Shown here: piece by piece, positions 9,031 to 63,612 of the stretch
Layout of the letters: each line of letters starts with the position of its first letter
Position numbering within the stretch: position 1 is the first letter of the stretch
DNA from: Octopus sinensis
Taxonomy: Eukaryota
Reading direction: 5' to 3'
Assembly: GCF_006345805.1 (NCBI RefSeq)
Contig: NC_043002.1
Coordinates: 74,276,001-74,340,000, forward strand
Length of the DNA: 64,000 nt
The notes under the pieces: model-generated
What the model was told of the DNA's origin: nothing
The model's database searches: none
The model's input: the letters and a program-made list of their open reading frames with translations, nothing else
Translations under genes and position numbers: made by a program

Positions 9031-9880
9031 ATATACACACATACAATAGGCTTCTTTCAATTTCTGTCTACTAAATCCACTCACAAGGCTTTGGTCAACC
9101 CAGGGCTAGACACTTGATGCATATATCATATACGTATGTATGTATACATATGTACATGCATACATACATACATACATACATACATACATACATACATACA
9201 TACATACATACATACATACATACATACATACATACGAGGTCCCCATCATATATTATGAGGCCTAGCATTTGTAACAATGCCAAGGGTTCTCATTTTCTGT
9301 TGTTCTTGAAAAGAAAAGCTGAAGTAAAAGACCATTTCTTTGAGATGTGTAGTGAGTGCATCTTTATGCTATTTAAGGGCACTAGATTGCTATCTTTCTA
9401 TAGAAGAAGATTTCCAAGATCCCTATTGGTAAAAGTAGAACAGATTTGGAATGAGGCAGCTTGATTTACAGGAATGACACCCATGTGCTAAATGTTTATT
9501 TAGAAGGAGTTAAGGGTGGTATCAGCTGCATAGGAATGAGTTATTAGAAGTGGCAGTAAAATACGTCATTAATGTATAGAAGATAGAGTGAAACAGACTT
9601 GACTGAAATTTGAGGCACACTAGAAATAGGGGCCATGTCAGAATGCATTGTAATGGTACAATCAGAGAGAAAGCAATCTAAATGAGTTGATACTGGCATG
9701 GTTGAGTGGTTGAGAAGTTTGCTCCACATGATACTTTGGGTAAATGTCTTCACCAAAGCCTCAAGTTGATACAAGCCTTGTGAGTAGAAAAAACTCATGC
9801 TCTGTTGGTTATGATGATGAGGGCTCCGATTGATCCAATCACTGGAACAGCTTGCTTGTGAAATTAACAATCCACAGACA

Positions 9881-10268
9881 TAGGCTGTGTTGGTAAGTAG
9901 CTTGCTTACCAACCACATGGTTCCAGGTTCAGTCCCACTGCGTGGCACCTTGGGCAAGTGTCTTCTACTATAGCCTTGGGCCAACTAAAGCCTTGTGAGT
10001 GGATTTGGTAGACAGAAACTGAAAGAAGCCCATCGTATATATGTGTGTGTGTTTGTGTGTCTGTGTTTGTCCCCCCAACATCGCTTGACAATCAATGCTA
10101 GTGTGTTTACGTCCCTGTAACTTAGCGGTTTGGCAAAAGAGACCAATAGAATAAATACTAGGCTTACAAAGAATAAGTCCTGGGGTTGATTTGCTCGACT
10201 AAAGGTGGTGCTCCAGTATGGCCACAGTCAAATGAGTGAAACAAGTAAAAGAGTAAAGAGTAAAAAGA
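9881..10268 (+). mobile_element. tRNA-derived SINE family B
   Basis: Head GGCTGTGTTGGTAAG...GGTTCAGTCCC (A/B-box-like), internal (TG)n, tail AAGTAAAAGAGTAAAGAGT; several homologues in window. Confidence 0.85.
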
Positions 10269-13560: not shown

Positions 13561-14644
13561 ATTGTATCACCATAGTCCAACAAATCACAAACTGTATAGT
13601 GTGAATGCAACCAATCGTAAGAAGCAAAACACAGTGGTGCAGGACATCTACTACATATGTGGGAAATTCTGTCTGTGGGTGTGTTTGTGGAGTTGTTAGC
13701 TAACTCCTCCTACATCATTTTATCGAATTTGATGAAACTTGATATGTGAGTAGAACTCATGTCTGCAAACCACATGGTATACTCAGATTGTTGAAAAAAT
13801 TAATAATAGGGCCCCTGGAAGGGATCCTTATATATATCTAATATAACCCATTCGTCCAGATTTTAACAGCCAAGGGAAATAACCCATTCATTTTCCTAAA
13901 TCATTTGGTATAAATCAAATTGAGTATGCTTATTTCTTAGTATTTGAATGGTTAGAGTTATTTTAGCAATTTATCCAGTACAACCCTTAAACAAGTAAAT
14001 AGTATTTTCCTTAACAATAGATCCACATATTTTCGGTTAATGACTTATTCACGAATATACCAACATTACCACTCCTGAGGGTAATATTCTCTGGGAATGC
14101 ACAAAAGCCCTTTTCAGAGTTATTTACTTTGAATTGTTATTATCGCATATCTGATTAGCCTGTTATTATGTAAGATGCTTCACGCTTTTAGTATACATAC
14201 CTTATTAGCATTTCCTCCTAAATTCTATATACTCTGGGAATGCAGGACACTGCTTATATGATGGTGATACTTGTTTACAACTATCATACAAAGCCAACAC
14301 TAGGAAACAGTAATATGTTCACACACACACACACACACACACACAATGAGCTTCTTTCAGTTTCCGTCTGCCTTGGTTGATTTAAATGCTTAAAGGTCAA
14401 AACAGTGTTGCCAAATGCCTTTGATATTTAGTCCCTTTCTCACACATACAGGTGTGGCTGTGTGGTAAGAAGTCTGTTTCCCAACCACATGGTTCTGGGT
14501 TCAATCCCATTGCATGGCACCTTGAGTAAGTGTCTTCTACGATGACCTCAGGTTAACCAAAGCATTGAGAGTTGGATTTGGTAGATGCAAACTGTCAGAA
14601 GCCTGTTGTATATCTCCCTCTCTTTCTATATTTATATATATATA

Positions 14645-14955
14645 TATCACCGTGATCACCATGACCGATCAGGCTATCAGATGTTGCTACACATCGCTGG
14701 TCACAATGTGCTTCGCATTGTTTTAGCCTTCAAATGATGCCACCCCACTGGCTAAGCGAGCAGGCCAACAGAAGAAAGAGTGAGAAAAAGTTGCAGTGAA
14801 AGAGTATAGCAGGGATCGCCACCACCCCCTGCCAGAGCCTCATGGAGCTTTAAGTGTTTTCGCTCAATAAACACTCACAACACCCGGTCTGGGAATCAAA
14901 ACTGCAATCCTACGACCGCGAGTCCATTGCCCTAACCACTGGGCCATTGTGCCTA
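14645..14955 (-). mobile_element. tRNA-derived SINE family E
   Basis: Reverse complement of head ATGGCCCAGTGGTTAGGGCA..GGACTCGCGGTCGTA, seen forward at 37165. Confidence 0.8.
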
Positions 14956-23180: not shown

Positions 23181-23383
23181 ATACTCTTTTACTTGTTTCA
23201 GTCATTTGACTGTGGCCATGCAGGAGCACCACCTTTAGTCGAGCAAATCGACCCCAGACTTATTCTTTGTAAGCCTAGTACTTATTCTATCAGTTTCTTT
23301 TGCTGAACTGCTAAGTTACAGGGGCGTAAACACACCAGCATCGGTTGTCAAGTGATGTTGGGGAGACAAACACAGACACAAAC

Positions 23384-23431
<48 letters not shown>

Positions 23432-23590
23432 CGGGCTTCTTTCAGTTTCTATCTACCAAATCCACTTACAAGGCTTTGGCTGGCCTGAGGCTATAGTAGA
23501 AGACACTTGCCAAAGGTGCCACACAGTGGAACTGAACCCCGAACCATGTGGTTGGTAAGCAAGCTACTTACCACACAACCACTCATATGC
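23181..23590 (-). mobile_element. SINE family B, full length
   Basis: Reverse complement of the 9881-10268 family, with internal (TA)n. Confidence 0.85.
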
Positions 23591-24016
23591 CTATGTTAAT
23601 TTATGTTTCAAACACCTGCTTAGTAATGACAAATTTATTTTGTTAAATTTTTCATTTTCAAAATTGACACAATAGTAGTGTATTTTAACAGAGATATGTT
23701 AACAAAGGGGTTAAACACCCTAAAAGATAGCACCTCCTACACAACCTTCCTCTTCCTTTTCAACTAGAACTTGAAGTTGATGAGAACTTGGCCAGAAAGG
23801 AAAATGTCTTCAAATCTTTCTGACAAGCCCACCTCTCAATTTCTTTGGTGGTAATCAGAAGACAGAGAAAGGTTAGTAGCCCTTCTTTGTCAAAGAAAGA
23901 TGGCATGTTGATTTCTTCTATAGATTTATCCTACACAAAACAGTAGCTCTTTGATACAAACCCACAAGTCAGTAATACATGGCTATTATTGATTGATAGT
24001 GTGGATGATGGTTTAA

Positions 24017-24025
24017 TAATAACTG

Positions 24026-24087
<62 letters not shown>
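24017..24087. repeat. (AAT)n microsatellite at the 5' junction of the R4 element
   Basis: Direct reading. Confidence 0.95.
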
Positions 24088-24088
<1 letters not shown>

Positions 24089-25310
24089 TTGAGCGATTGC
24101 TTGGAAGAAGTATGGAGAATTGGAGGACGGACTTGACAGCATATGGAAGAAGTTTAGGGACAGTAGAAATCAGGAGGGGCATCTTCCAAGGGGACTGCCT
24201 GTCCCCACTGATCGTTGTACTGTGTTTGATATTGCTAACACTAATTCTGAGGAAAGCAAAAGCTGGGTATGTATTCAAAAGCCACCAACAAAAAGTCAAC
24301 CATTTGTTACTCATGGATAACCCCAAACTTTATGGTAAAGATGAAGCCCAAGTCAGTTCCCTCATTGATACAGTGTATACTTTCAGTGCTGATATCAGAA
24401 TGGAGTTTGGACTGAGAAAGTGTGGTGTGTTAGTCTTGAAGAGAGGCAAAATCAAATGTATGGATGGGCTAACGATACCGTCGGTGGAGGTTATGAAGCA
24501 GATAGAAGAGACGGGCTATAAGTACTTGGGGACTTTGGAAATGGATAAATTGATGGAGAAAGAAATGACAGAAAAATTTAAAGTGGAGTACTTGCAGACT
24601 GAGACCGATCCTTAAGTTGAAATTAAATGGATGGAGTAAGATCGAAGCTATCAACACCTGAGCGATTTCACTCCTTAGATATGGAGCAGGGGTAATCACA
24701 TGGACAGTAGACGAGCTAAACAGATTAGACAAAAAGACAGGGAAGTTGCTAACTAGATATGGGACACTCCACCCCAAAAGTGACACAGATAGACTGTATG
24801 TTCCAAGAAAAAGAGAGGGAAGAGGACTTGCTGGATGCAAACACAGCATTAGAGCAGAAGAAAACAACATAGCATGGTATGTAAAAAATGCCACAGAACC
24901 GCTATTATTAGAAGTAAGAAGGTCAGGCTTGTGTAGGATGAAAGATTGCAAAAATAAAGCACTGTACAAGCAATTGAAAACGAATGAAACTGAAAATAGG
25001 TGGGTAAAGAAAAGAATGCATGGACAATTTCATAGGGATGTTGAAGATAAGACAGACAGAGAAAAAAGATGGCTGTGGATGACTAGAAGTGATTTAAAAC
25101 TGGAAACGGAGGCTCTAATCTGTGCTGCCCAAGAGCAAGCACTAAGAACAAACTACATAAAATACAGAATAAACAACACAGCAGAAAGAGATAAGTGCAG
25201 AATCTGTGGACAAAATGGTGAAACCGTATGGCACATTACCAGCCAATGTATGCCACTAGCCCAGAAGGACTATAAGAGATGCAATGATAATATAGCAAGG
25301 CTTGTCCAGT
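24088..25310 (+). pseudogene. R4/Dong-clade non-LTR retrotransposon remnant (RT and CCHC finger), 5'-truncated and frameshifted
   Basis: RRGIFQGDCLSPL, NHLLLMDNPKLY (YMDD-type catalytic motif decayed), DIRMEFGLRKC, YKYLG, MHGQF, QEQALRTN, CRICGQNGETVWHITSQC; frameshift near 24600. Confidence 0.88.
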
Positions 25311-25319
25311 TGAGCAGGT

Positions 25320-25680
25320 CCCTTGGTGGTTGATGATATGTGCATCTCTGATCATGAGTAGAAGTAGTGAGGGAGCATCATAGCCGTGTGTTGAAAGGAA
25401 TTCTTTGGGGTTTGAATAATTCATGTCTGGAAACATGGCTATTTTGTTCATCATCCTCAAACGACCCTTATTCAGGGACCTTTTGAGCAGGATGGGCTAT
25501 TTTGACGTGGGTCCCACCTGCAAGGTCATGTGCTGTTTATTTTGATATGAGCTCACCATGTCAGGCACATATGGTTGTGATGCATGTGCCTGGTGTACCC
25601 TTATCAGACAGATAGTCATGGTGGGTATATTGGGCTTCGTATATTTTACTCCAGTGTCACTTCGATGGCATGCACTGCTC
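25320..25680. mobile_element. Unclassified repeat family G truncating the R4 element
   Basis: GATCATGAGTAGAAGTAGTGAGGGAGCATCATAGCCGTGTGTTGAAAGGAATTCTTTGGGGTTTGAATAA matches ~42795-42870. Confidence 0.55.
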
Positions 25681-28345: not shown

Positions 28346-28870
28346 AGTACTAGGCTTACAAAGAATAAGTTCTGGGGTGAATTTGGTCTACTAATGGTGA
28401 AGCTCCAGCATGACCACAGTCAAATGACTGAAACAAAAAAAAAGAGTAAAAAATAATTTGTATCCCAAATTCAATGATTGATTGATTGATTCTAGTTTCA
28501 GCTCATGAGCTGTGGCCATGCTGGGGCACCGCCATTTTTACAATGTTTACAATGCTTTACGAAAATTGTTTAAATATTGGTAGAATTAGTAAATATATAT
28601 ATATGTCTTAGATAGGATTGATTTGATTTCACAGACCTGTTGAGGCAAGTGAAATCAAATCAATCCTATCTAATACATATATATATATATTTACTAATTC
28701 TACTAATATTTAAACAATTTTTATAAAGCATTGTAAACATTGAATTTGGGATACAAATTATTTTTTACTCTTTTTTCTTTTGTTTCAGTCATTTGACTGT
28801 GGCCATGCTGGAGCTTCACCATTAGTAGACCAAATTGACCCCAGAACTTATTCTTTGTAAGCCTAGTACT
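28346..28870. repeat. 525-bp quasi-palindrome (inverted duplication), 16-nt loop at 28633-28648
   Basis: Arms are near-perfect complements apart from a 64-bp insertion (28477-28540) in the left arm. Confidence 0.9.
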
Positions 28871-28970
28871 TATTCTATTGGTCTATTTTGCTGAACCGCT
28901 ACATTACAGGGACGCAAACACAGTAACATTAGTTGTCAAGTGATGGAGGGGAGACAAGCACAGACACACA

Positions 28971-29005
<35 letters not shown>

Positions 29006-29116
29006 GATGGGCTTCTTTCAGTTTCCATCAACCAAATTCACTCACAAGGCTTTGGTCGACCCGAGGTCATAGTAGAAGACACTTGCTCAAGGTGCCATGC
29101 AGTGGGACTGAACCTG
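28765..29116 (-). mobile_element. SINE family B (its tail forms part of the palindrome's right arm)
   Basis: Family homology. Confidence 0.85.
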
Positions 29117-29264
29117 GAATCATGTGGTTGGTAAGCAAGCTACTTACCACACAGCCAATTTATCATTTGTTTATAATAAATTGTCCAGCGACAAATTAAT
29201 GCACCAATGACTTACTAGTGTTTCATTCAAAATTTCAATTCTATAGTGGTTCTGTATAATTTTC

Positions 29265-29319
<55 letters not shown>

Positions 29320-31703: not shown

Positions 31704-32589
31704 ATAATCACCTTATTTTAAATTGTATGGATAATACCATACTAAATTCTGGTGCCTCAACTTAAGTACCATATTCATCTGAATCTAAATTTTTTACTGA
31801 ACTCATCGACCATACCTAGAGTATATATATATATACACATATATATGATGGACTCTCCCATCAAAGACAACATACTAGCATTCAGCTTTTGCCAAACAAT
31901 CTGCACACATGATTTGTTTATAGTGATCAAATGTTTGTGCCACAAATTAGCTCACTCTCTCCATCAAATCAATGTTGTCTGAACAGAGGTGCATTGTTTA
32001 CCACACGTCAGGTGTCAAAGTGATCACAAAACAATGTGAGATGAAGTGTTTTGATCAAGAACACACCACCTGGTGTAGGAATTGAAATCACAATCTCACA
32101 ATTACAAGTGCAACAACCTAACCACTAGGTCATTCACTGTGGTGAATTCACCGTGTACTAGCTATAGAAAATATTTTGATATTGGAGCATATAATCCCTT
32201 GATGGAAAAAAAAAATGAGAATAAGTACATGGGGGAATCAAACCCACATCTCTTATATTGATGATAAGTGTGCTGACCAATTACACCAACTTGACTATCT
32301 GAGTTCTTTCTATTATATTTAACAACTATAATTTCATAGCGTTATGTAAACAAACAAAGATGTGTGTATTCTGTGTTAAATTAAGAAATGGTGACAAGTG
32401 AAAATTCTGTAAATAATAATTATAAGCTTTAAGTTTATAAGTATTCACCATGTATAGGTTATAGAAAATAGTCTGATATTGGAGTGAATATAAGAGGTGT
32501 ATATAAAAGGTTCAATTCCCACTCCTAATGCCTGTGATGGGCATAGGTACAGCCCTATCCTTTATGCCACCCCATTAAAACTAAAATTA

Positions 32590-32990: not shown

Positions 32991-34161
32991 ATTCATGTTG
33001 TATTGTCCTTCACTAGGGCATGTAATTTTGTATGCTGTGTAGTGTGTGTGTGTGTGTGTGTTAAAGGATATCCATTAAGGATCTAGGTATATCAAAGTGA
33101 AAATCCAAGGATGAATAGAACCATAAATGTGGCATAAAAACATAATAAACACAGATGATTGGGTTATCTGGTATAGTTACAATTGTTTTGTCAACTCTTA
33201 ATTGTGACATGGTATACTCAGGTATGTAGTATGCACAAACTCCTTTAAATCATGTAATACATTATGCAACCCTCAATTCATCAGATATACCAAATATACA
33301 AGCGAGCAATGACATGCTGAAGAGTCAACAGATCATTAACAAATGAAAGTTTGAATCAGAATTACCAACATTTCAGAAATGTAAAGTGGGTGGAACTATA
33401 ATCAAGAGGGTTGATAGCAGAATATGGTTGTAAATTATAGAATAGTTAAAAAGTATAACTAAGATGTCATTACATTTTGTGACATCACTCATAAAAACTG
33501 GTACTAGCAAAACAGGCTTATATAGCATCAGATAACAGGTGCTGAGTATGACATCTGACTCTATCAAAACATTTTTGAAGTCAGTTGCTATTGTCGTTCT
33601 CAGAAAAAAAAAAAGAAAGAAAACAAAAAGAAACCATTTACAATTTATAATGTCTTGTACATCAATGGCATGATCAGTATCAACATAAAAGATATAAAGG
33701 GTATAAAATTTACATTAGTTAAATATCAAAATTTAGAGAGATCGATTATATAACTGCTATGAAGTTACAAGTTGAAAGGCTAGAATTGGTAGAGATGGAA
33801 AAACAAAACCAACAGTCACATTAAAAACTCGAAAAACCATGAATCCCAATATTTTTATCGATATTGTTACTTTATTATTATTGAGAGTAAAGCAAGTCTA
33901 TTAAAATCATATAGGTTAAGTAGATAGGTCATACCAGTAATAATAATAATAATTTAAAATTACGAGGAACATTCAGAAAATGTTAAAAGAATTTAAAATA
34001 AATTACAAAGAATTATAAAAGAATTAAAAAGGCCATAAATGTTAAAAGAATTTATAAGGATTATACAGAATTGTAAAAATCATAACCAGGGAGGATGAAG
34101 CAAGTATAAAAAGCAAATTGATTAAAGTTATTAAATTGTAAATTATATAAAATTACAATTA

Positions 34162-35448
34162 CAAGAAGTGTTCATTGAAGATTTCCCCTGATCCACTTCC
34201 CAAGGACTGGGATAAATGAAACTTGACATAATTATTAGTCCTCCTCTACATAGCCACCACCAATGATGATACACTTTTCCCATTGCTTTATGTAGCTGTG
34301 ATGTCCTCATCTGAAGAAGTCGGTAGGTTGCATCTGGAGCCAAGACTTTACCCCAGAAATAAGTTCATCATCCAAAAAGTGCTTCCCCTTCATAAAAGAC
34401 TTCATGGTTGGAAAGAGGTGGAAGTCAGATGGTGCGAGGTCGAGGGAGTAAGTGGGATGAGGAAGGATTTCATAGCTGCAGGAGCATGCTATCATCTGGG
34501 CAACATGTGCATTGTGAACTGGGGCATTGTCTTGGAGGAACTGGACTCCTTTGACAGCATGCCACACCTCCCTACTTTGACGGTGTCCTGCAATTTCTGC
34601 AGCAGAAAAGCATAATGTCCTGTTAATTGTACTGCCCTTTGCCAGAAAATCCATCATCACTACTCTATGCTGGTCCCAAAAGACTGTGAGCATCACCTTG
34701 TCTGCTGAGGGTTGGACCCAAGCCTTCTTTGGAGGTAATGAGTTATCATGCTTCCATTGCTTTGACTGGACTTTAGTTTCAGGATTGTAGTAATGGACCC
34801 ATATCTCATCCTGTGTGATAAGCCTGCATAAAAATCTTCCTCGTTTTCTTGGTACATTGCCAAAAGAGCCTGGGAGCAATTGACTCATTTCTGCTTCTGA
34901 AAAGGTGTGAGCATCCAGGGAAACCATCATGCAGACAACTTCCACATGTGCAAATGGTCATGAATTATTTTTTCCATAGACCCTACACTTATCGTCACGT
35001 CTTCGACTAGTTGTCAAATAGTTATGCAGCGATCCTCTAAAATGACAGCTTCCACTTTATGGATGGTGTCATCATCAGTGGCAGAATGTGGTCATCCAGT
35101 AATAGGAGCAGTTTCCACTGACGTCCAACCACTTTTAAACTGGCAATGCCAGTGCTTGACTACGTCATATGATGATGAATTGTCACCATAAACTTCTTTC
35201 ATCTCATTGAAAGTCTCTTTTGGTGTACGACCTTTCAAGTATAAGAACCTAATCACTGATCTGCATTCAACTGCCTCCATTATAACACTTTAGTCCACTT
35301 CAGCAGTTGTAAAAGACAAATGAATATTAGTGGAAAGCTACAATTTATATTGTGACATGTAGAGACATGTATAATTACACCTGTACAAGTTCCATTTCCT
35401 GCAATAACTGGAAGTGGGTCAGGGGAAATCTTTAATGAACACCCCTCG
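34162..35448 (-). mobile_element. Full-length (1287 bp) decayed mariner transposon, irritans/Hsmar2-like TIRs
   Basis: TIRs C(G/A)AG(G/A)(G/A)GTGTTCATT(A/G)AAGATTTCCCCTGA(C/T)CCACTTCC with TA at 34160-61 and 35449-50; HTH ORF 35280..35092; catalytic ORF with TQDEIW, QDNAPVH, SLDLAPSD (D,D34D); several frameshifts. Confidence 0.95.
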
Positions 35449-35627
35449 TATTGGCATATGTTGTTAGAAGTAATGTTATACAAAGGTAGTTAAAGTATGA
35501 TCAAATTATTAGTATTAATAATATTAGGATATGCTAGGCTGCCTAAATACATAATTCATTGTAGGTTTATTGATATGTATCTAGTGTTCAGAGATTTTAT
35601 AGAATCTATTGAAGTATAAGAAAGTTC

Positions 35628-35879: not shown

Positions 35880-36376
35880 TATAAGAAAGTTCGGTGGATC
35901 TATTAATAACATCACCTGTGCATTTTAAAATTTCCAACAATTCCAGATAGCAGAGAGATTGTATCCATATCTATCACAAGCATAAAGCTTAGCATATCTA
36001 GTGATGCTCCATGATACTTTTGGCCTTTAACTCCAGGACTTCATGGAGAGTGATGTTATTTTTGCATTATCTCTCCTAAATGTTTGAAGATGATTGTGTA
36101 TACTCAATTTAAAATCTGAAGCTGAGCTTACGTAAATGAAACCATGTACATTAGTTTTTAACATTACTTTTATAAACAATCTTTTAGTTAGGAATTAATT
36201 TCCAAGTGGACATTCGTCGCTCAACTCACCCCCCAAAAATGTGTTAAATTTTTTTTTATCAACGAACAAGTCACAGTTTTGAGCAATGAAAATTTTGACA
36301 CCAAATTGGAAATAAATGTTTAAGTGAAGTTAACAGCCTCTGCATTTCGGAATGGCTAACTTGTGTCTTCCATACT

Positions 36377-36735
36377 GCAGGAGTGGCTGTGTGGTAAGTG
36401 GCTTGCTTACCAACCACATGATTCCGGGTTCAGTCCCACTGCGTGGCACCTTGGGCAAGTGTCTTCTACTATAGCCTCGGGCCGACCAAAGCCTTGTGAG
36501 TGGATTTGGTAGACAGAAACAGAAAGACGCCCATCGTATATGCGTGTGTGTGTCCAACATTGCTTGACAACCGATGCTGGTGTGTTAACGCCCCCATAAC
36601 TTAGCGGTTCAGCCAAAAAGACCGATAGAATAAGTATTAGGCTCACAAAGAATAAGTCCTGGGATCGATTTGCTCGACTAAAGGTGGTGCTCCAGCATGA
36701 CCACAATCAAAATGACTGAAACAAGTATAAGAGAA
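36377..36735 (+). mobile_element. SINE family B, full length
   Basis: Head GCAGGAGTGGCTGTGTGGTAAG...GGGTTCAGTCCC; family tail. Confidence 0.85.
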
Positions 36736-41285: not shown

Positions 41286-41800
41286 CATCTACCGCCTCTT
41301 CCTACTTCCCCCAATCACACGACCGATTTCTTGACCACCACGCAGTCGATTTCCTGTTCACCATGCGGTATTTTCCAACTAATTGCTGTCACCGGAATAC
41401 CAATATTAAACCGCTACATCGCGCGACCTTTCTCGGCCAATCGCAGGCTAACATCTAATAGTAAACACCGACTCTCTACAACCGAACTCTCATTCAGACC
41501 CCAATGGCCGAAGACTACACTTATTGGTTTCAGATTTTGGCACAAGACCAGCTAGTTCGAGGAAGCGGAGTTAATCGATTTCATCGACCCCAGAACGCAA
41601 CTGATACTTATTTTATCGACTCCAGAAGAACGCAAAGCAAAGTCGACCTCGGCAGAATTTGAACAAAGAACGTAAAGGCGAACGAAATGCCTGTAAGCAT
41701 TACACATTTTGGAGCCTTTAAATATTCGGTGAACAAATTGCTGAAATGGAATCGATAAGAATAAATTATGTAAAAAGAAAAAAAATCAAAGAAAACAACT

Positions 41801-41806
41801 GCTTAC
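41801..41806 (-). other. foxj1: 5' splice donor GTAAGC of the FoxJ1 intra-forkhead intron
   Basis: Homology stops exactly at WQ; canonical donor. Confidence 0.88.
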
Positions 41807-42325
41807 TTGCCAACTTGGATCAGCCATCCGATAGTAAACAAAATTGTCTGTAATCCAGGAATATATCGCAGATAGAGTCATTTTGTTTGACGGACTTGCT
41901 TTCATTGCCATACATATTAGGGCAGCATAGGAAAATGGAGGTTTTACACAAGAGTTTGTTTTATAATCAATTGTCTGATGCTTATTTGTATTTTTGGAAT
42001 TGTTTAGATACATAAAATGGCTGTATTTTAATCTAGAGTCCGATTCTCCATCATCTTGAACAACCCGTAAAACTCCGTTGTCGTCAGCTTCTTCCGATAC
42101 CCCTCCTCTACGTCCCATCGATGTTGTCAAAACCCGCGCTGATTCGCAGTTTGGAGACGGCGACGGATTTGGTACCCGAAGAATCTTTAAGTTCTGAAGC
42201 CAGTTCAGACTGGTGAGACTATCGTCCAAATTAATTGAGCCGGTATTGTAGGTGTCAGACGGGTATTTGGATAACCAATTTTCACGCAGTTGTTTTGCCA
42301 AGTTACTCGTCGTGTAAATAGGCAT
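41807..42325 (-). CDS. foxj1: Forkhead box J1, first coding exon (N-terminus plus first half of the forkhead domain, 173 codons)
   Basis: ATG at 42325 in AAAATG context. FoxJ1 N-terminal motif LDDSLTSLNWLQ, and DYKTNSCVKPPFSYAALICMAMKASPSNKMTLSAIYSWITDNFVYYRMADPSWQ closely matching the FoxJ1 pattern ([44 protein letters not shown]). Ends at a CAA|GTAAGC phase-0 donor. Confidence 0.93.
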
Positions 42326-42403
42326 TTTGAGAGATGAAAGCACTCCAGTGCTCAGGAGAGCTTCACTACGGTCCGAGGAAGCACCCTCCACGGTTTATTC
42401 TGC

Positions 42404-44056: not shown

Positions 44057-44311
44057 GGATCTTTTCGGTTTGAACGGCAGTTTTTAACATAATTTCTAGG
44101 TAACTAAAAAATTTTAAACTTCGTATACTGGTAGAATGTGTTTATAAAACACCCTTTTCTCTTGGTTTTATTGAGAAAATTCTATAGTTTGTAAGATATT
44201 TGGGGTTTTTTTCTTCAATTTCTGCAATTTCAACCAATCGATGACGTCCATTGAGTTAAAAATTTCATATGACACCGCTAGAAAAAACTGCCGTTCAAAC
44301 CGAAAAGATCC
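44057..44311. mobile_element. Merlin-like MITE (255 bp)
   Basis: 29-bp perfect TIRs GGATCTTTTCGGTTTGAACGGCAGTTTTT; perfect 8-bp TSD GATCTGGG (44049-56 / 44312-19). 5'-GG termini with 8-9 bp TSDs fit Merlin; hAT not excluded. Confidence 0.8.
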
Positions 44312-49202: not shown

Positions 49203-49842
49203 GGATCTTTTCCCTTTGAACGGCAGATCGAGGAATTCATTTTTTGTAACTAAACACTTTCAAACTTCGGACACTGGTAGAGTTAGGGTTTTAAGGTTAA
49301 TGTTTTAGGGTTACGGTTAGGGTTTTAGGGTTGGGATGTTAGGGTTAGGGTTGGGATTTTAAGGGTTAGAATTACGAAAAAAAGTGAAAAATGAAGAAAT
49401 TGGAGGGGGGAAAAAAGTCATTCCGAAAATGGTAGCTGAAAAACAGGAAAAAAAACGAACTAAAAGCAGTTGAAATGCACGAATGATTGTGGTGGTGCCA
49501 TGAAGTAAACATGCTTCAGATACACTCGTTTATTCATATAAACGTAACTGAGATGAAATATGTCATAAATAACAGTGACGAACGAAATATACACCGCCGG
49601 AAGTTGTTGTTGACAAACAACAGCAGTAATTTTATTCAGCTGAATACACGTCATTGATTGGTTGAAATTACCGAAATACGACTACTTTAACACAAAATAA
49701 CTTTTAAAATACAAACTTTTTTTCAACAACACTAAGAGTAAAAGATTGTTTTATATGACACATTCTACCAGTGTCCGAAGTTTGAAAGTGTTTAGTTACA
49801 AAAAATTAATTTCTCGATCTGCCGTTCAAAGGGTAAAGATCC
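49203..49842. mobile_element. Merlin-like non-autonomous element (640 bp) with telomere-like repeats, inserted in a SINE C2
   Basis: ~80-bp TIRs GGATCTTT(T/A)CCCTTTGAACGGCAGATCGAG...CTTCGGACACTGGTAGA; TTAGGG-rich 49283-49370; SINE halves at 49070-49202 and 49843-49940. Confidence 0.8.
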
Positions 49843-56743: not shown

Positions 56744-57021
56744 GTCTCATATCGCAACTGTCTAATCACAAGTTCACAACGTTGTTTCTGATGCGAGAGT
56801 GAGGAGAGAGTGTCACTACAACTTCGGTTTCTCATCGATGTTTATAGTCTCACTTACACACGGGATTCCCACAGTTTCCATCAACCAAGTTTCCACTCAC
56901 AAGGCCTTAATCAACCAGAAGTTAACAGTAGAAGACACTTAATTCGATTCCCGTCCAAATCCATGTTGCTCCACCACAACGGTTCTAGAGCAACTGGTAC
57001 CAAGACAACTCATTCCCGGAC

Positions 57022-57547
57022 GCGAAATTTTTTCCCCACGAGAGTTCCGGACCCCAGTAATGAACTCATTTGCATACAGCCAATCAGAGCTCACCTTGAC
57101 CATGTCAAGTTAACAAACACACTCTACCAAGTAAAGACGAAGAACGGTGTTGTAAGTCGACCGATCGCCCAAGTTATGCCTGATTTTAGGAGACAAATAA
57201 TTAGACAGATTTGCATCTATACCTATTATCGGATTTTGTTGGGGCCCTATATGGTAGAGATGTGGATGGGAAATGTGGCTAGAGCGTGATGTGCTAGCAA
57301 CTTACTGTTTTACAATGTAAACAACAACTCAACTATGCAGAGGCAGCCATGGTTGAAACAAGAACAAGATCAAGAGGCATTACTAAAAGAGAAAAGAAGC
57401 ATGGTCATTCCTTATCCAAGTGACCTTATCTCATCGCCCATGACTTGTTATGTGCTCATAAATTAGTTTGATAGTTGACCTCTGATTGGCTGTATGCAAA
57501 TGAGTTCATAACTGGAGTACGGAACTCTCGTGGGAAAAACATTTCGC
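57022..57547. mobile_element. Nested MITE (526 bp) with ~75-bp TIRs and 9-bp TSD
   Basis: TIRs GCGAAAT..TTTTCCC.ACGAGAGTTCCG...ATTTGCATACAGCCAATCAGAG; TSD TTCCCGGAC at 57013-57021 / 57548-57556. Confidence 0.8.
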
Positions 57548-57664
57548 TTCCCGGACAACTATCAGACAACTCATACCTGGACAATTGATATCTAGGACAA
57601 CTGATTATATAGGACAACTCATAACAGATATAAAGTGATAAAGATTTAATTTTGAAAGAAATTT

Positions 57665-57708
57665 TGCGCGTGTGTGGTGTGTGTGTATGTGGGTGCGGGT
57701 GGTGTGTA

Positions 57709-57752
<44 letters not shown>

Positions 57753-59472
57753 CGTGCGTATGTGTGTGCGTGTGTGGTGTGTATTTGTGTTTGTGGTGTT
57801 TGTGTGTGTATGTGTGTGGTGTGTATATATGTGTGTATGTGTGTGGTGTGTGTGTATGTGGGTGTGTGTGTTTGTGTGGTGCGTGTGGTGTGTATATGTG
57901 TGCATCTGTGTGGTGTGTCTGTGTGTATATGTGCGTATGTGTGTGTGCGTGTGTGGTGTGTATTTGTGTGCGTGTGGTGTGTGTGTATGTGGGTGTGTGT
58001 GTGTGTGTGTGTATGTGGGTGTGTGTGTGTGTGGTATGTGTGTATGCGTGCACGCGTATGTGTGTGTGTGTGGTGTGTCTGTATGTGGATACGTGTGTAG
58101 TGTGTATTTGTGTGCGTGTGTGGTGTGTGTATGCGTGCGTATGAGTGCATGCGTGTATGTGTATGCGTGCGTATGTGTGTAGTGTGTGAGCGTGGTGCGT
58201 GTGTATGTGTGTGGAGTGTATTTGTGTGTGCGTGATGTGTATGTGTGCATACGTGGTGTGTATGGTGTGTATTTGTGAGCGTGTGTGGTGTGTGCGCGTG
58301 TGTGGTGTGTGCGCGTGTGTGGTGTGTACGTGAGGTGTGTGTGTGTACGTGTGTGTGGTGTGTATTTGCATGTTTGTATGTGGCGTGTGTATGTATATGT
58401 GTGTGGTGTGTATTTGCATGTTTGTATGTGGTGTGTGTATATGTGTGTGGTGTGTATTTGTGTGTGTGTGTGGTGTGCATGTGTGTGATGTGCGTATGTG
58501 TATGTGTGTTTGTGCGTGTGTATGTGGTGTCTGTGTGCGTGTGTGGTGTGTATTTGTGTGTGTGGTGTGTGTATGTGTATGTATGTGCGTGTGCGTGCGT
58601 GTGTGTGGTTTGTGTGTGCATGGGGTGTGTATTTGTGTGTGTTGTGTGTGTGTGTGTGTGTGTGCGTGTGCGGTGTGTATGTATGTGGGTGTGTGTGGTG
58701 TGTATTTGTGTTTGTGGTGTTTGTGTGTGTATGTGTGTGGTGTGTATATATGTGTGTATGTGTGTGGTGTGTGTGTATGTGGGTGTGTGTTTGTGTGGTG
58801 CGTGTGGTGTGTATATGTGTGCATCTGTGTGGTGTGTCTGTGTGTATATGTGCGTATGTGTGTGTGCGTGTGTGGTGTGTATTTGTGTGCGTGTGGTGTG
58901 TGTGTATGTGGATGCGTGTGTGGTGTGTATTTGTGTGTGTGTGTGTGGTATGTGTGTATGCGTGCACGCGTATGTGTGTGTGTGTGGTGTGTCTGTATGT
59001 GGATACGTGTGTAGTGTGTATTTGTGTGCGTGTGTGGTGTGTGTATGCGTGCGTATGAGTGCATGCGTGTATGTGTATGCGTGCGTATGTGTGTAGTGTG
59101 TGAGCGTGGTGCGTGTGTATGTGTGTGGAGTGTATTTGTGTGTGCGTGATGTGTATGTGTGCATACGTGGTGTGTATGGTGTGTATTTGTGAGCGTGTGT
59201 GGTGTGTGTGCGCGTGTGTGGTGTGTGCGCGTGTGTGGTGTGTACGTGAGGTGTGTGTGTGTACGTGTGTGTGGTGTGTATTTGCATGTTTGTATGTGGC
59301 GTGTGTATGTATATGTGTGTGGTGTGTATTTGCATGTTTGTATGTGGTGTGTGTATATGTGTGTGGTGTGTATTTGTGTGTGTGTGTTGTGTGCATGTGT
59401 GTGATGTGCGTATGTGTATGTGTGTGTGTGTGTGTGTGTATGTGGTGTCTGTGTGCGTGTGTGGTGTGTATT

Positions 59473-59503
<31 letters not shown>

Positions 59504-59645
59504 ATGTGCGTGTGCGTGCGTGTGTGTGGTTTGTGTGTGCATGGGGTGTGTATTTGTGTGTGTATGTGTGTGTGTCCGTGTGTGTGGTGCGTATTTGTGC
59601 GTGTATGTGTGTGTATGTGCATGTGTGTTTGTGCGTGTGTGTGGA
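57665..59645. repeat. 2-kb degenerate (TG)-rich satellite with ~0.9-kb higher-order period
   Basis: Diagnostic blocks recur about 914 bp apart (e.g. ATGAGTGCATGCG at 58141 and 59055). Confidence 0.85.
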
Positions 59646-61134
59646 ATGTGCGGTTATTTTATCCTTGATTTTTTTTCAAAATGAAGTCTTTATCACATCA
59701 TGCCTGTTATGAGTTGTCCTATTTATCAGTTGTTCTATATAATCGGTTGTCTTAGATATCAATTGACCAGCCGTGAGTTGTCCTATATAATCAGTTGTCC
59801 TAGATATCAATTGACCAGCCATGAGTTGTCCTATATAATCAGCTGTCCTAGATATCAATTGACCAGCCATAAGTTGTCCTACATAATCAGTTGTCCTAGA
59901 TATCAATTGTCCAAGATATCAATTGTCCAGTATGAGCTGTCCTACATAATCAGTTGTCCTAGATATCAATTGTCCAAGATATCAATTGTCCAGCTATGAG
60001 CTGTCCTATTTATCAGTTGTTCTATATAATTAGTTGTCCGAGATATCAATTATCCAGGTATGAGTTGTCTGATATGAGTTGTTCGGGAATGAGTTGTCCT
60101 GTTATCGGTTGCCCTGGCACATACCACAACTACTAAGTAGTACGAACACCATTGCACTCGTTACTTTTTACTTCACTCAGAACAGATTCCACAATGCGTG
60201 CCTGTGTGCTACTGTAGTGGTGGTGGTGGTGTGTGTGTGTGTATTTGTGTGTGTGTGTGTGGTGTGTGTGTGTGTGTGTGTGTGGTGTGCATGTGTGTGA
60301 TGTGCGTATGTGTATGTGTGTTTGTGCGTGTGTATGTGGTGTCTGTGTGCGTGTGTGGTGTGTATTTGTGTGTGTGGTGTGTGTATGTGTATGTATGTGC
60401 GTGTGCGTGCGTGTGTGTGGTTTGTGTGTGCATGGGGTGTGTATTTGTGTGTGTATGTGTGTGTGTCCGTGTGTGTGGTGCGTATTTGTGCGTGTATGTG
60501 TGTGTATGTGCATGTGTGTTTGTGCGTGTGTGTGGAATGTGCGGTTATTTTATCCTTGATTTTTTTTCAAAATGAAGTCTTTATCACATCATGCCTGTTA
60601 TGAGTTGTCCTATTTATCAGTTGTTCTATATAATCGGTTGTCTTAGATATCAATTGACCAGCCGTGAGTTGTCCTATATAATCAGTTGTCCTAGATATCA
60701 ATTGACCAGCCATGAGTTGTCCTATATAATCAGCTGTCCTAGATATCAATTGACCAGCCATAAGTTGTCCTACATAATCAGTTGTCCTAGATATCAATTG
60801 TCCAAGATATCAATTGTCCAGTATGAGCTGTCCTACATAATCAGTTGTCCTAGATATCAATTGTCCAAGATATCAATTGTCCAGCTATGAGCTGTCCTAT
60901 TTATCAGTTGTTCTATATAATTAGTTGTCCGAGATATCAATTATCCAGGTATGAGTTGTCTGATATGAGTTGTTCGGGAATGAGTTGTCCTGTTATCGGT
61001 TGCCCTGGCACATACCACAACTACTAAGTAGTACGAACACCATTGCACTCGTTACTTTTTACTTCACTCAGAACAGATTCCACAATGCGTGCCTGTGTGC
61101 TACTGTAGTGGTGGTGGTGGTGTGTGTGTGTGTA

Positions 61135-61140
<6 letters not shown>
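59390..61140. repeat. Tandem duplication, 891-bp offset, covering the transposon right end and flank
   Basis: 59560-60245 appears identical to 60451-61136; identical ORF pairs are offset by 891. Confidence 0.92.
59705..60100. repeat. 48-bp tandem repeat in the right TIR (duplicated at 60596-60991)
   Basis: Unit GAGTTGTCCTATATAATCAGTTGTCCTAGATATCAATTGACCAGCCAT, roughly 7 copies with variants. Confidence 0.9.
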
Positions 61141-61210
<70 letters not shown>

Positions 61211-62251: not shown

Positions 62252-62811
62252 CAGTGTGAGAAATGCGTTAGTTAACTCGCATTATTTTCTTGATTCTCTG
62301 AAAAGATGGTAACTTACAGGAAGTTTTGTAATGATCAACGTTGGGAAGGAGGGGTTCCGAACCGCACTACAACCATTGTTGTAGATATACATCTGTATCG
62401 CAAACAGACCATTTTATAGCCATATACGTCGCGCATGCTCACTTCCCCTCTCCCACATACGTTTTTCTGTGTCAGTCGTAGTCATCTATGCGTTTTAGTG
62501 ACACACGCTAACTGCTTATCAAAGTGGTCGGTTACAGTCGTGGCCATACTATTTACATTATCCAATCTCTCTCCCTCTCTCTCTCTCTCCCTCTAAATAT
62601 CAGTAAGGATGTAAGATTTGAGCGAGTTTGGATGCTTCTCAGGTCTGACAGCAGTTATATGAAGGTCAGCAGAAGATATTAACGCGGAAATTTGATACGA
62701 GGAAACCCGAAGACTTAGTCTTCGGGAAACTAAACAACAGCAACAATAATAACTGCTTCTTGTTTAGACACAAAGCCAGCAATTTTGAAGGAAAAGAGAG
62801 TAGTGAATATA

Positions 62812-63215
62812 CTCTTACTCTTTACTCTTTTACTTGTTTCAGTCATTTGACTGTGGCCATGCTGGAGCACCGCCTTTAGTCGAGAAAATTGACCCTAGGA
62901 CTTATTCTTTGTAAGCCTAGTACTTATTCTATCGGTCTCTTTTGCTGAACCGCTAAGTTACGGGGACGTAAACACATCACCATCGGTTGTCAAACGATGT
63001 TGGTGGGGAGGGGGACAAACACAGACATACAAACATATACACACAAATATATACATATACACGACGGGCTTCTTTCAGTTTCCGTCTACCAAATCCACTC
63101 ACAAGGCTTTGGTCGGCCCGAGGCTATAGTAGAAGACACTTGCCCAAGGTGCCACGCAGTGGGACTGAACCCTGTGGTTGGTAAGCAAGCTACTTACCAC
63201 ACAGCCATTCCTACG
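62812..63215 (-). mobile_element. SINE family B, full length
   Basis: Family homology. Confidence 0.85.
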
Positions 63216-63612
63216 GAAGAGGTAGACCCAGGAAGACCTGGGACGAAGTGGTGAAGCACAATCTTCGAACATTAGGCCTCACCGAGGCAATGACCAATAA
63301 CCGATATGAAGTACTTTATTTTATTTCCACGAGAAATATGAACGGTACAGTTGACGGAGGCGGGATTTCAACTCATTACGTAAAGTGCCCAAAGAAATAC
63401 CGCAAGGCCTTTTGACCAATGGTTTCTCGTATAGCACAAGGACATAAATTTCGAGGAAGGCGTAAATCGATTACGTCAACCCCAGAACTTGGAAACCCGC
63501 CAAGGGTAACTTTGCCCTTTTCATCCTCTCAGAATCGATAATTTCAAGTACCAGTCGATGCAGTCTATTAACTCAATCTCCTTTCAAAACTGCTAGCCTC
63601 AATTAGAAACCG

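What the first reader, a model, noticed from the sequence alone, without database searches (positions are those of the whole stretch)
56981..60121. 9-bp-TSD MITE nested inside the TIR of a 9-bp-TSD Mutator/foldback-like element
Removing 57022-57547 and one copy of TTCCCGGAC restores a left arm matching the right arm's reverse complement over about 100 bp. The outer element has a 9-bp TSD (8/9), GG-starting termini and arms built from GGACAACT modules. The inner element has its own ~75-bp TIRs and a perfect 9-bp TSD. Established: 9-bp TSDs and modular long TIRs typify the MULE/foldback group. Inference: two MULE-type families, one landing about 40 bp inside the other's transposase-binding end, possibly targeted.
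Basis: partly seen in the sequence, partly recalled or inferred. Interest (0 to 1): 0.7.

Follow-up and report, generated by a model that had tools for sequence, protein, structure and literature searches.

The report
MITE nested in a foldback transposon
A small non-coding mobile element sits inside one arm of a larger non-coding "foldback" mobile element in an invertebrate genome; this is real but ordinary nested junk DNA, and a recent local duplication has given the larger element a second right arm.

Summary
A 526-bp MITE (57022-57547; 75-bp TIRs, 90.7% identical; perfect 9-bp direct repeat TTCCCGGAC) sits 41 bp inside the left arm of a 3.1-kb foldback-type element (56981-60121). Removing it restores colinearity with the right arm. 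The outer arms are one-directional arrays of ~16-bp modules with a GGACAACT core: 7 on the left, 26 on the right, first module at nt 8 of both ends. They enclose a 2-kb GT-rich loop with no coding capacity. The flanking repeat is CACCACAAC/TACCACAAC (8/9) and lies at the 3' end of an old SINE copy.

- Only the left terminus starts GG; the right starts TG.
- The outermost 23 nt are only 65% identical.
- The arms are very unequal (146 vs 452 bp).
- An 891-bp tandem duplication (776 bp exact) gives a second identical right arm plus flank at 60561-61113.

The architecture matches type-2 foldback MULEs (Muta1, Tm1, Rehavkus). No transposase, second copy or empty site could be reached, so the superfamily is inferred, most weakly for the inner element. 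"Targeted" insertion is untested. This is an ordinary nested transposon of low interest.

The parts
56972..56980 (.). Left copy of the outer element's target-site duplication, CACCACAAC. It lies in the 3' end of a degenerate SINE copy.
56981..57021 (+). Outer element, left arm, terminal 41 nt. It holds the terminus GGTTCTAGAG..., modules 1-2 and the first half (GGAC) of module 3.
   Evidence: (I10)
57013..57021 (.). Inner element TSD, copy 1 (TTCCCGGAC)
57022..57547 (.). Inner 526-bp MITE. TIRs are 57022-57096 and 57473-57547 (75 bp, 90.7%), starting GCGAAAT. The 376-bp core is unique, has no family hit, and is 41.6% GC.
   Evidence: (I1)
57548..57556 (.). Inner element TSD, copy 2 (TTCCCGGAC)
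57548..57661 (+). Outer element, rest of the left arm: modules 3-7 plus the unique inner-end segment that pairs with 59670-59725.
   Evidence: (I2-I6)
57662..59669 (.). Loop of the outer element. A GT-rich degenerate microsatellite (57670-59643; G 43%, T 44%) carries an internal ~915-bp tandem duplication (57770-58690 vs 58691-59605, 96.2%). Only low-complexity ORFs.
59670..60121 (-). Outer element, right arm: 26 modules of ~16 bp organised as 48/63/96-bp tandem units. Terminus (reverse complement) is TGTGCCAGGG...
60122..60130 (.). Right copy of the outer TSD, TACCACAAC (8/9 with the left copy)
60222..61112 (.). 891-bp tandem duplicate of 59331-60221 (97.4% overall; 60377-61152 = 59486-60261 exactly, 776 bp). 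It contains a GT segment (60222-60534, partly identical to 58459-58642), a second right arm (60561-61012) and a second copy of TSD plus flank (61013-61113).
61120..61209 (.). (GT)n microsatellite of the right flank; one breakpoint of the 891-bp duplication lies in it.

Best explanation
Two unrelated non-autonomous cut-and-paste DNA transposons are nested.

Outer element (56981-60121). It is a foldback-type element inserted at the 3' end of an old SINE copy, duplicating 9 bp of target. Its arms are one-directional arrays of ~16-bp modules with a GGACAACT core. These are most likely multiple binding sites for a transposase supplied in trans. The arm copy number has drifted to 7 versus 26 modules. 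The middle is a non-coding GT-rich tract.

Inner element. A 526-bp MITE of another family later inserted into module 3 of the left arm, 41 bp from the terminus, duplicating 9 bp (TTCCCGGAC).

Later rearrangement. Unequal exchange or slippage between GT tracts duplicated ~0.9 kb twice, once inside the loop and once across right arm, flank and the flanking (GT)n. The second event gave an identical second right arm.

Shown: the anatomy, both flanking repeats, restoration of arm colinearity, module polarity and register, and the duplications.

Inferred: mobility in trans, modules as transposase-binding sites, and the superfamily. The outer is probably MULE in the broad sense (Phantom/Muta1/Tm1/Rehavkus-like). 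The inner is MULE or Merlin.
For: Inner element:
- 75-bp TIRs and a 9/9 TSD.
- Excision restores the arm.

Outer element:
- The inverted repeat ends exactly at an 8/9 direct repeat.
- Both repeat copies resemble the SINE 3' box TTACCACACAGCC, which SINE copies carry once.
- There are 7 and 26 modules spaced 14-17 nt (mode 16). All point the same way relative to the terminus. The first five are in the same register in both arms, and none is reversed.
- GGACAACT occurs 22 times against 2.3 expected.
- No coding capacity.

Literature:
- Muta1 has 8-9-bp TSDs and a 10-bp terminal motif followed by 12-bp repeats with 3-4-bp linkers. Its natural non-autonomous copy has 3 and 7 repeats at its two ends, and more repeats give stronger binding and more excision (PMC5499845).
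- Tm1 has 9-bp TSDs, ~14-bp tandem repeats of variable number so that the two TIRs differ in size, asymmetric terminal motifs, and a nested unrelated IR element (PMC3169594).

Duplications.
Against: - Only one copy of each element is available. There is no second copy, no empty site in another genome and no autonomous partner.
- The outermost 23 nt of the two outer arms match at only 15/23, although termini are usually the best-conserved part. Only one end starts GG.
- The outer TSD is imperfect and could be 8 bp.
- A 9-bp TSD is not exclusive to MULEs (Merlin: 8-9 bp).
- The exact identity of the duplicated right arm could be an assembly artefact.
Confidence: 0.75

Rival explanations
1. The nested anatomy is the same, but one or both families belong to a superfamily other than Mutator. 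Candidates are Merlin (8-9-bp TSD, long TIRs possible) or, for the outer element, an 8-bp-TSD superfamily (hAT, P-like) if its flanking repeat is read as perfect ACCACAAC.
For: - Merlin makes 8- or 9-bp TSDs, has TIRs of 24-462 bp and has terminal GG (PMC8101967).
- The outer left end starts GG.
- The outer repeat is perfect over 8 bp only.
- The inner element has no subterminal repeats and nothing but its TSD length to tie it to MULEs.
- The window holds another MITE family with GG termini and an 8-bp repeat (44057-44311).
Against: - The inner element starts GC, not GG, and the outer right end starts TG.
- With an 8-bp TSD the two outer arms fall 1 nt out of register.
- Arrays of ~16-bp subterminal repeats with unequal copy number and a 9-bp TSD are the described signature of foldback MULEs and Rehavkus.
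- P-type foldbacks are not known to make 9-bp TSDs (my own knowledge: Galileo makes 7 bp).
Confidence: 0.25
2. The outer structure is not a transposon. It is a local inverted duplication or palindromic rearrangement around an unstable GT-rich tract, and the flanking 8/9 repeat is chance.
For: - There is a single copy in 64 kb and none elsewhere that could be searched.
- The region is demonstrably rearrangement-prone, with two ~0.9-kb tandem duplications.
- The termini are poorly conserved.
Against: - The inverted repeat stops exactly at the direct repeat.
- An 8/9 match at zero offset is rare among control inverted-repeat pairs.
- Both arms share the same terminal register and the same unique inner-end segment.
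- The modular polar arms are a known transposon architecture.
- A SINE-derived 9-mer is found on both sides.
Confidence: 0.07
3. The inner family preferentially inserts into the GGACAACT arrays of the outer family (targeted nesting).
For: - The insertion lies inside module 3, with the TSD ending in GGAC.
- MULE families with strict target preference exist, for example MuTAnT in TA microsatellites (PMC4486113, abstract listed).
Against: - There is one event only.
- The arms (three including the duplicate) make up about 1.6% of the window (my arithmetic from the arm coordinates), and the finding was selected because it is nested.
- Nested insertions are commonplace in repeat-rich genomes.
- None of the other 32 modules is hit.
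Confidence: 0.08
4. The second right arm and flank (60222-61112), and perhaps the ~915-bp loop duplication, are assembly artefacts of a GT-rich low-complexity region rather than real duplications.
For: - 776 bp are identical base for base. A further 184 bp are identical to a different loop unit, giving a mosaic.
- The breakpoints lie in GT repeats.
Against: - The loop units differ by 3.8%, which is unlike a simple assembly stutter.
- Unequal exchange between GT tracts is a plausible biological mechanism.
- No reads were available to test this.
Confidence: 0.3

Closest known systems
Muta1 and its non-autonomous derivative Muta1NA1 (Aedes aegypti; Phantom-group MULE, 'type 2 foldback'; PMC5499845)
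   Same: - 8-9-bp TSD.
- The TIR is a short terminal motif followed by an array of short subterminal repeats with a 15-16-bp period.
- The natural non-autonomous copy has unequal ends (3 and 7 repeats), compared with 7 and 26 here.
- The left terminus GGTTCTAGAG shares 6/10 with Muta1's GGGTCTACCC. This is a weak similarity and only a lead.
   Different: - No sequence homology was shown.
- Here the two termini differ (GGTTCTAGAG vs TGTGCCAGGG), whereas Muta1 TIRs are 97% identical.
- The right arm is much longer (452 bp).
- The loop is a 2-kb GT tract.
- No transposase is known for this element.
Tm1 (Meloidogyne; Mutator/Foldback family; PMC3169594)
   Same: - 9-bp TSDs.
- Composite TIRs with a variable number of ~14-bp tandem repeats, so the two TIRs of one element differ in length.
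- Short asymmetric terminal motifs outside the inverted repeat.
- MITE-like non-coding members.
- One described copy carries a nested unrelated inverted-repeat element.
   Different: The motifs and host are different. Tm1's nested element has a 7-bp TSD. Tm1 has an identified Phantom-type transposase, and none is identified here.
Rehavkus (MULE-related; Repbase; PMC6446971 and bioRxiv 10.1101/2024.12.02.626372)
   Same: - 9-bp TSD and TIRs of 26-400 bp.
[quoted passage not shown]
- Arm repeats prone to expansion into satellite-like arrays.
   Different: Rehavkus is defined by a transposase with a PHD finger, which could not be tested. It has been reported from arthropods and annelids, and the host here is unidentified.
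Drosophila Foldback (FB) elements and Tetris
   Same: Long arms built from tandem subrepeats with different copy numbers in the two arms. FB has a 9-bp TSD (my own knowledge). Both have a tendency to seed tandem arrays (Tetris: PMC4079207, title and abstract).
   Different: The subrepeats are unrelated, and no FB-type coding region is present.
Merlin MITEs
   Same: 8-9-bp TSD and long TIRs are possible (PMC8101967).
   Different: The conserved terminal GG is absent from the inner element (GC) and from the outer right end (TG).

Membership tests
Foldback-type MULE (Muta1 / Phantom / Tm1) | Long TIRs made of a terminal motif plus tandem subterminal repeats, with copy number variable between the ends | tested here: met
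   7 and 26 modules of ~16 bp, all in one orientation and in the same register from nt 8
Foldback-type MULE (Muta1 / Phantom / Tm1) | Target-site duplication of 8-10 bp, usually 9 | tested here: met
   CACCACAAC/TACCACAAC, 8/9, exactly at the ends of the inverted repeat. One copy only, and a perfect 8-bp reading is also possible.
Foldback-type MULE (Muta1 / Phantom / Tm1) | Conserved, G/C-rich terminal motif shared by both ends | tested here: inconclusive
   The outermost 23 nt match at 15/23. The ends start GGT and TGT. Tm1 shows that asymmetric terminal motifs occur in this group.
Foldback-type MULE (Muta1 / Phantom / Tm1) | An autonomous relative with the same TIRs encoding a MULE DDE transposase | not testable with these tools
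   No such ORF in the window.
Foldback-type MULE (Muta1 / Phantom / Tm1) | Multiple dispersed copies with different flanks | not testable with these tools
   No other copy in 64 kb. Nothing in the protein or DNA collections.
Rehavkus | 9-bp TSD, TIRs of 26-400 bp, and a minisatellite or subterminal tandem repeats at the inverted termini | tested here: met
   compared with Table 1 of PMC6446971
Rehavkus | Transposase with a PHD finger | not testable with these tools
   The element is non-coding.
MITE (structural class), inner element | Short (<~800 bp), with TIRs and a TSD, and no coding capacity | tested here: met
   526 bp, 75-bp TIRs, 9/9 TSD. ORFs are at most 43 aa inside the element, and the ORF running into it has no Pfam hit.
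MITE (structural class), inner element | High copy number | not testable with these tools
   One copy in the window. External scans were empty.
Mutator superfamily, inner element | 9-bp TSD | tested here: met
   TTCCCGGAC, 9/9. This is not exclusive to the superfamily.
Mutator superfamily, inner element | TIRs shared with a MULE-transposase-encoding element | not testable with these tools
   No relative found.
Merlin | 8-9-bp TSD | tested here: met
Merlin | Conserved terminal 5'-GG-3' on both TIRs | tested here: not met
   The inner element has GC at both ends. The outer has GG on the left and TG on the right.
P-superfamily foldbacks (Galileo) | 7-bp TSD (my own knowledge) | tested here: not met
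   The flanking repeat is 8-9 bp.

The most novel reading that the evidence does not exclude
The most novel reading not excluded has two parts. First, the inner MITE family homes to the transposase-binding module arrays of the foldback family, a parasite-of-a-parasite targeting. Second, the foldback's arm minisatellite and GT loop actively drive local tandem duplication that carries host flank with it, an early stage of satellite or segmental-duplication birth from a foldback element. Both would need genome-wide counts.
Probability: 0.08. Interest if true: 0.45.

Novelty: new member of a known kind. Interest (0 to 1): 0.15.

Why it matters
The practical value is for repeat annotation of this genome:
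- Two TIR families get clean boundaries: a foldback element with a GGACAACT module array, and a 526-bp MITE.
- The right arm acts as an internal 'empty site' that proves the nesting.
- There is a concrete case of a foldback arm plus host flank being tandemly duplicated through GT tracts.

It opens no long-standing question. Nested MITEs and foldback MULEs with unequal modular arms are well described.

Tried and rejected
Routes to other copies or an empty site, all empty:
- Searching arm- and MITE-derived ORFs in the 5.8-billion-protein collection returned only one marginal hit and no self hit.
- Exact look-ups of two ORFs overlapping the MITE found no record.
- Exact DNA scans with a 23-mer of the inner TIR and a 22-mer of the arm module found nothing in metagenome, prokaryote-genome and viral contigs.

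Host identification:
- The FoxJ1-like exon has a best relative at 69% on an unnamed ENA contig. Named relatives are all chelicerates at about 40%.
- The 20-kb related locus L001 shares no repeats with the window.
- Literature searches for sequence words and for the ENA accession found nothing.
- From memory, the abundant SINE-like repeat resembles one common in octopus genomes. This was not verified.

SINE-consensus 'empty site' test. The element lies at the very 3' end of the SINE, so continuity across the junction is only weakly testable. What can be said is that the SINE 3' box occurs on both sides.

Alternative boundaries for the inner element. Extending the TIR 8 nt into the near-palindromic TCCCGGA gives no flanking repeat better than 5/9, so this was rejected.

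A transposase in the window. Only mariner fragments, reverse-transcriptase fragments and a forkhead exon were found. Rfam gave only a weak tRNA hit elsewhere.
Full report
**Context.** The window is eukaryotic, invertebrate-like DNA at 31-46% GC. It is rich in microsatellites and in a SINE-like repeat. It also carries mariner fragments, reverse-transcriptase fragments and one FoxJ1-like forkhead exon. The host could not be named. The exon's best relative is 69% identical on an unnamed ENA contig, and all named relatives are chelicerates at about 40%.

**Inner element.** 57022-57547 is 526 bp with 75-bp terminal inverted repeats at 90.7% identity.
- It is flanked by TTCCCGGAC at 57013-57021 and 57548-57556. 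The repeat is exactly 9 bp, because the bases outside it differ.
- It has no ORF over 43 aa of its own, no Pfam hit and no other copy in the window.
- When it is deleted together with one repeat copy, the left arm of the outer element becomes colinear with the reverse complement of the right arm. The right arm carries the target once, as TTCCCGAAC.
- The right arm is therefore an internal paralogous empty site, and the insertion is as well proven as one locus allows.

**Outer element.** The inverted repeat extends to 56982/60120. The 9-mers immediately outside are CACCACAAC and TACCACAAC.
- Each arm starts with 7 nt and then carries modules with a GGACAACT-like core every 14-17 nt (mode 16). 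There are 7 on the left and 26 on the right. All point the same way relative to the terminus. The first five are in the same register in both arms.
- Perfect GGACAACT occurs 22 times in the window against 2.3 expected, and 21 of those are in the arms.
- The extra right-arm modules form 48/63/96-bp tandem units.
- Both arms end internally in the same unique segment (57606-57661 vs 59670-59725, 86%).
- Between them lies a 2-kb tract that is 87% G+T and has only low-complexity ORFs.
- The element sits at the 3' end of a degenerate SINE copy. Both flanking 9-mers resemble the SINE's terminal TTACCACACAGCC box, which other copies carry once.
- In a control of about 33 unrelated inverted-repeat pairs, with +/-3 nt of slack, 9-mer matches were mostly 4-6. 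The single 8/9 belongs to what looks like another real MITE.

- Only the left end starts GG; the right end is TGTGCC.
- The outermost 23 nt match at 15/23, whereas the next 43 nt match at 42/43 with a 3-nt gap.
- The outer repeat could be a perfect 8-mer with a 1-nt longer right end.
- The arms are 146 and 452 nt long.
- 59486-60261 is repeated exactly at 60377-61152. The whole 891-bp unit 59331-60221 is 97.4% identical to 60222-61112. A second identical right arm (60561-61012) and a second copy of the TSD plus 98-bp flank therefore follow the first.
- The duplication breakpoints lie in GT repeats of the loop and of the flanking (GT)n at 61120-61209.
- The loop itself contains a ~915-bp tandem duplication at 96.2%.
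- 60271-60454 is identical to loop unit 1 (58459-58642), so the third unit is a mosaic. Either repeated unequal exchange or misassembly could explain this, and I cannot tell which.

**Mechanism.** The arm architecture matches experimentally studied foldback MULEs.
- Muta1 has 8-9-bp TSDs and a 10-bp terminal motif plus 12-bp repeats with 3-4-bp linkers. Its natural non-autonomous copy has 3 and 7 repeats at its two ends. More repeats strengthen transposase binding and raise excision, and the terminus plus one repeat suffices (PMC5499845).
- Tm1 has 9-bp TSDs, ~14-bp repeats of variable number, asymmetric terminal motifs and MITE-like members (PMC3169594).

I infer that the GGACAACT modules are multimeric transposase-binding sites. 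I infer that the element moved by cut-and-paste using a transposase supplied in trans. The MITE split module 3 but left the terminus plus two modules intact. By analogy with Muta1, this need not have immobilised the outer element. None of this is shown here.

**Superfamily.** No transposase is present in the window. No relatives could be reached in any collection. A 9-bp TSD also fits Merlin, although the Merlin GG termini are not met. For the inner element the TSD length is the only clue.

**Verdict.** This is a real but ordinary nested pair of non-autonomous TIR transposons, new members of known kinds. Targeted nesting is unsupported. Interest is low.

Noticed in passing
window 44057-44311 and 49203-49842: A 255-bp MITE-like element has perfect 29-bp TIRs (GGATCTTTTCGGTTTGAACGGCAG...) and a perfect 8-bp direct repeat, GATCTGGG. 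A 640-bp element with near-identical TIR starts and 79-bp arms at 96% lies 5 kb away, without an obvious TSD. This is a GG-terminated family with an 8-bp TSD, distinct from both elements of the finding.
   Followed up: partly
window 34160-35450 and 53-400: A 1.3-kb mariner-like element with 41-bp TIRs encloses a decayed transposase ORF (Pfam Transposase_1). A separate Mos1-type HTH_48 fragment lies at the window start.
   Followed up: partly
window 62800-63220, 56855-56980, 28920-29290, 23330-23700, 14340-14710, 9750-10120, 36250-36620: There are at least seven copies of one SINE-like repeat, each with an internal microsatellite. The outer element is inserted at the 3' end of one of them. From memory it resembles an abundant repeat of octopus genomes; this was not verified.
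   Followed up: partly
window 41786-42391 (-): An exon encodes the N-terminal part and the start of the forkhead domain of a FoxJ1-like protein. The best relative is 69% identical (unnamed ENA contig). Named relatives are all chelicerates at about 40%.
   Followed up: partly
window 57075-57087 and 57482-57494: Both TIRs of the inner MITE carry CAGCCAATCAGAG, which reads as a CCAAT-box-like motif (my own knowledge). The two copies are in mirror-image orientation because they lie in the TIRs.
   Followed up: no
window 23989-25333: Reverse-transcriptase and zf-RVT fragments of a non-LTR retrotransposon, interrupted by an (AAT)n-type run. The Pfam hits are below the gathering thresholds.
   Followed up: no
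window 28346-28870: A 525-bp inverted repeat with 136-bp arms at 96% and no flanking direct repeat. The arm sequence (AGTACTAGGCTTACAAAGAATAAGT...) belongs to the SINE-like repeat, so it is probably two inverted SINE pieces.
   Followed up: no
window 32230-32289 (-): A weak tRNA match just above the Rfam gathering score (29.9 vs 29 bits), possibly SINE-related.
   Followed up: no
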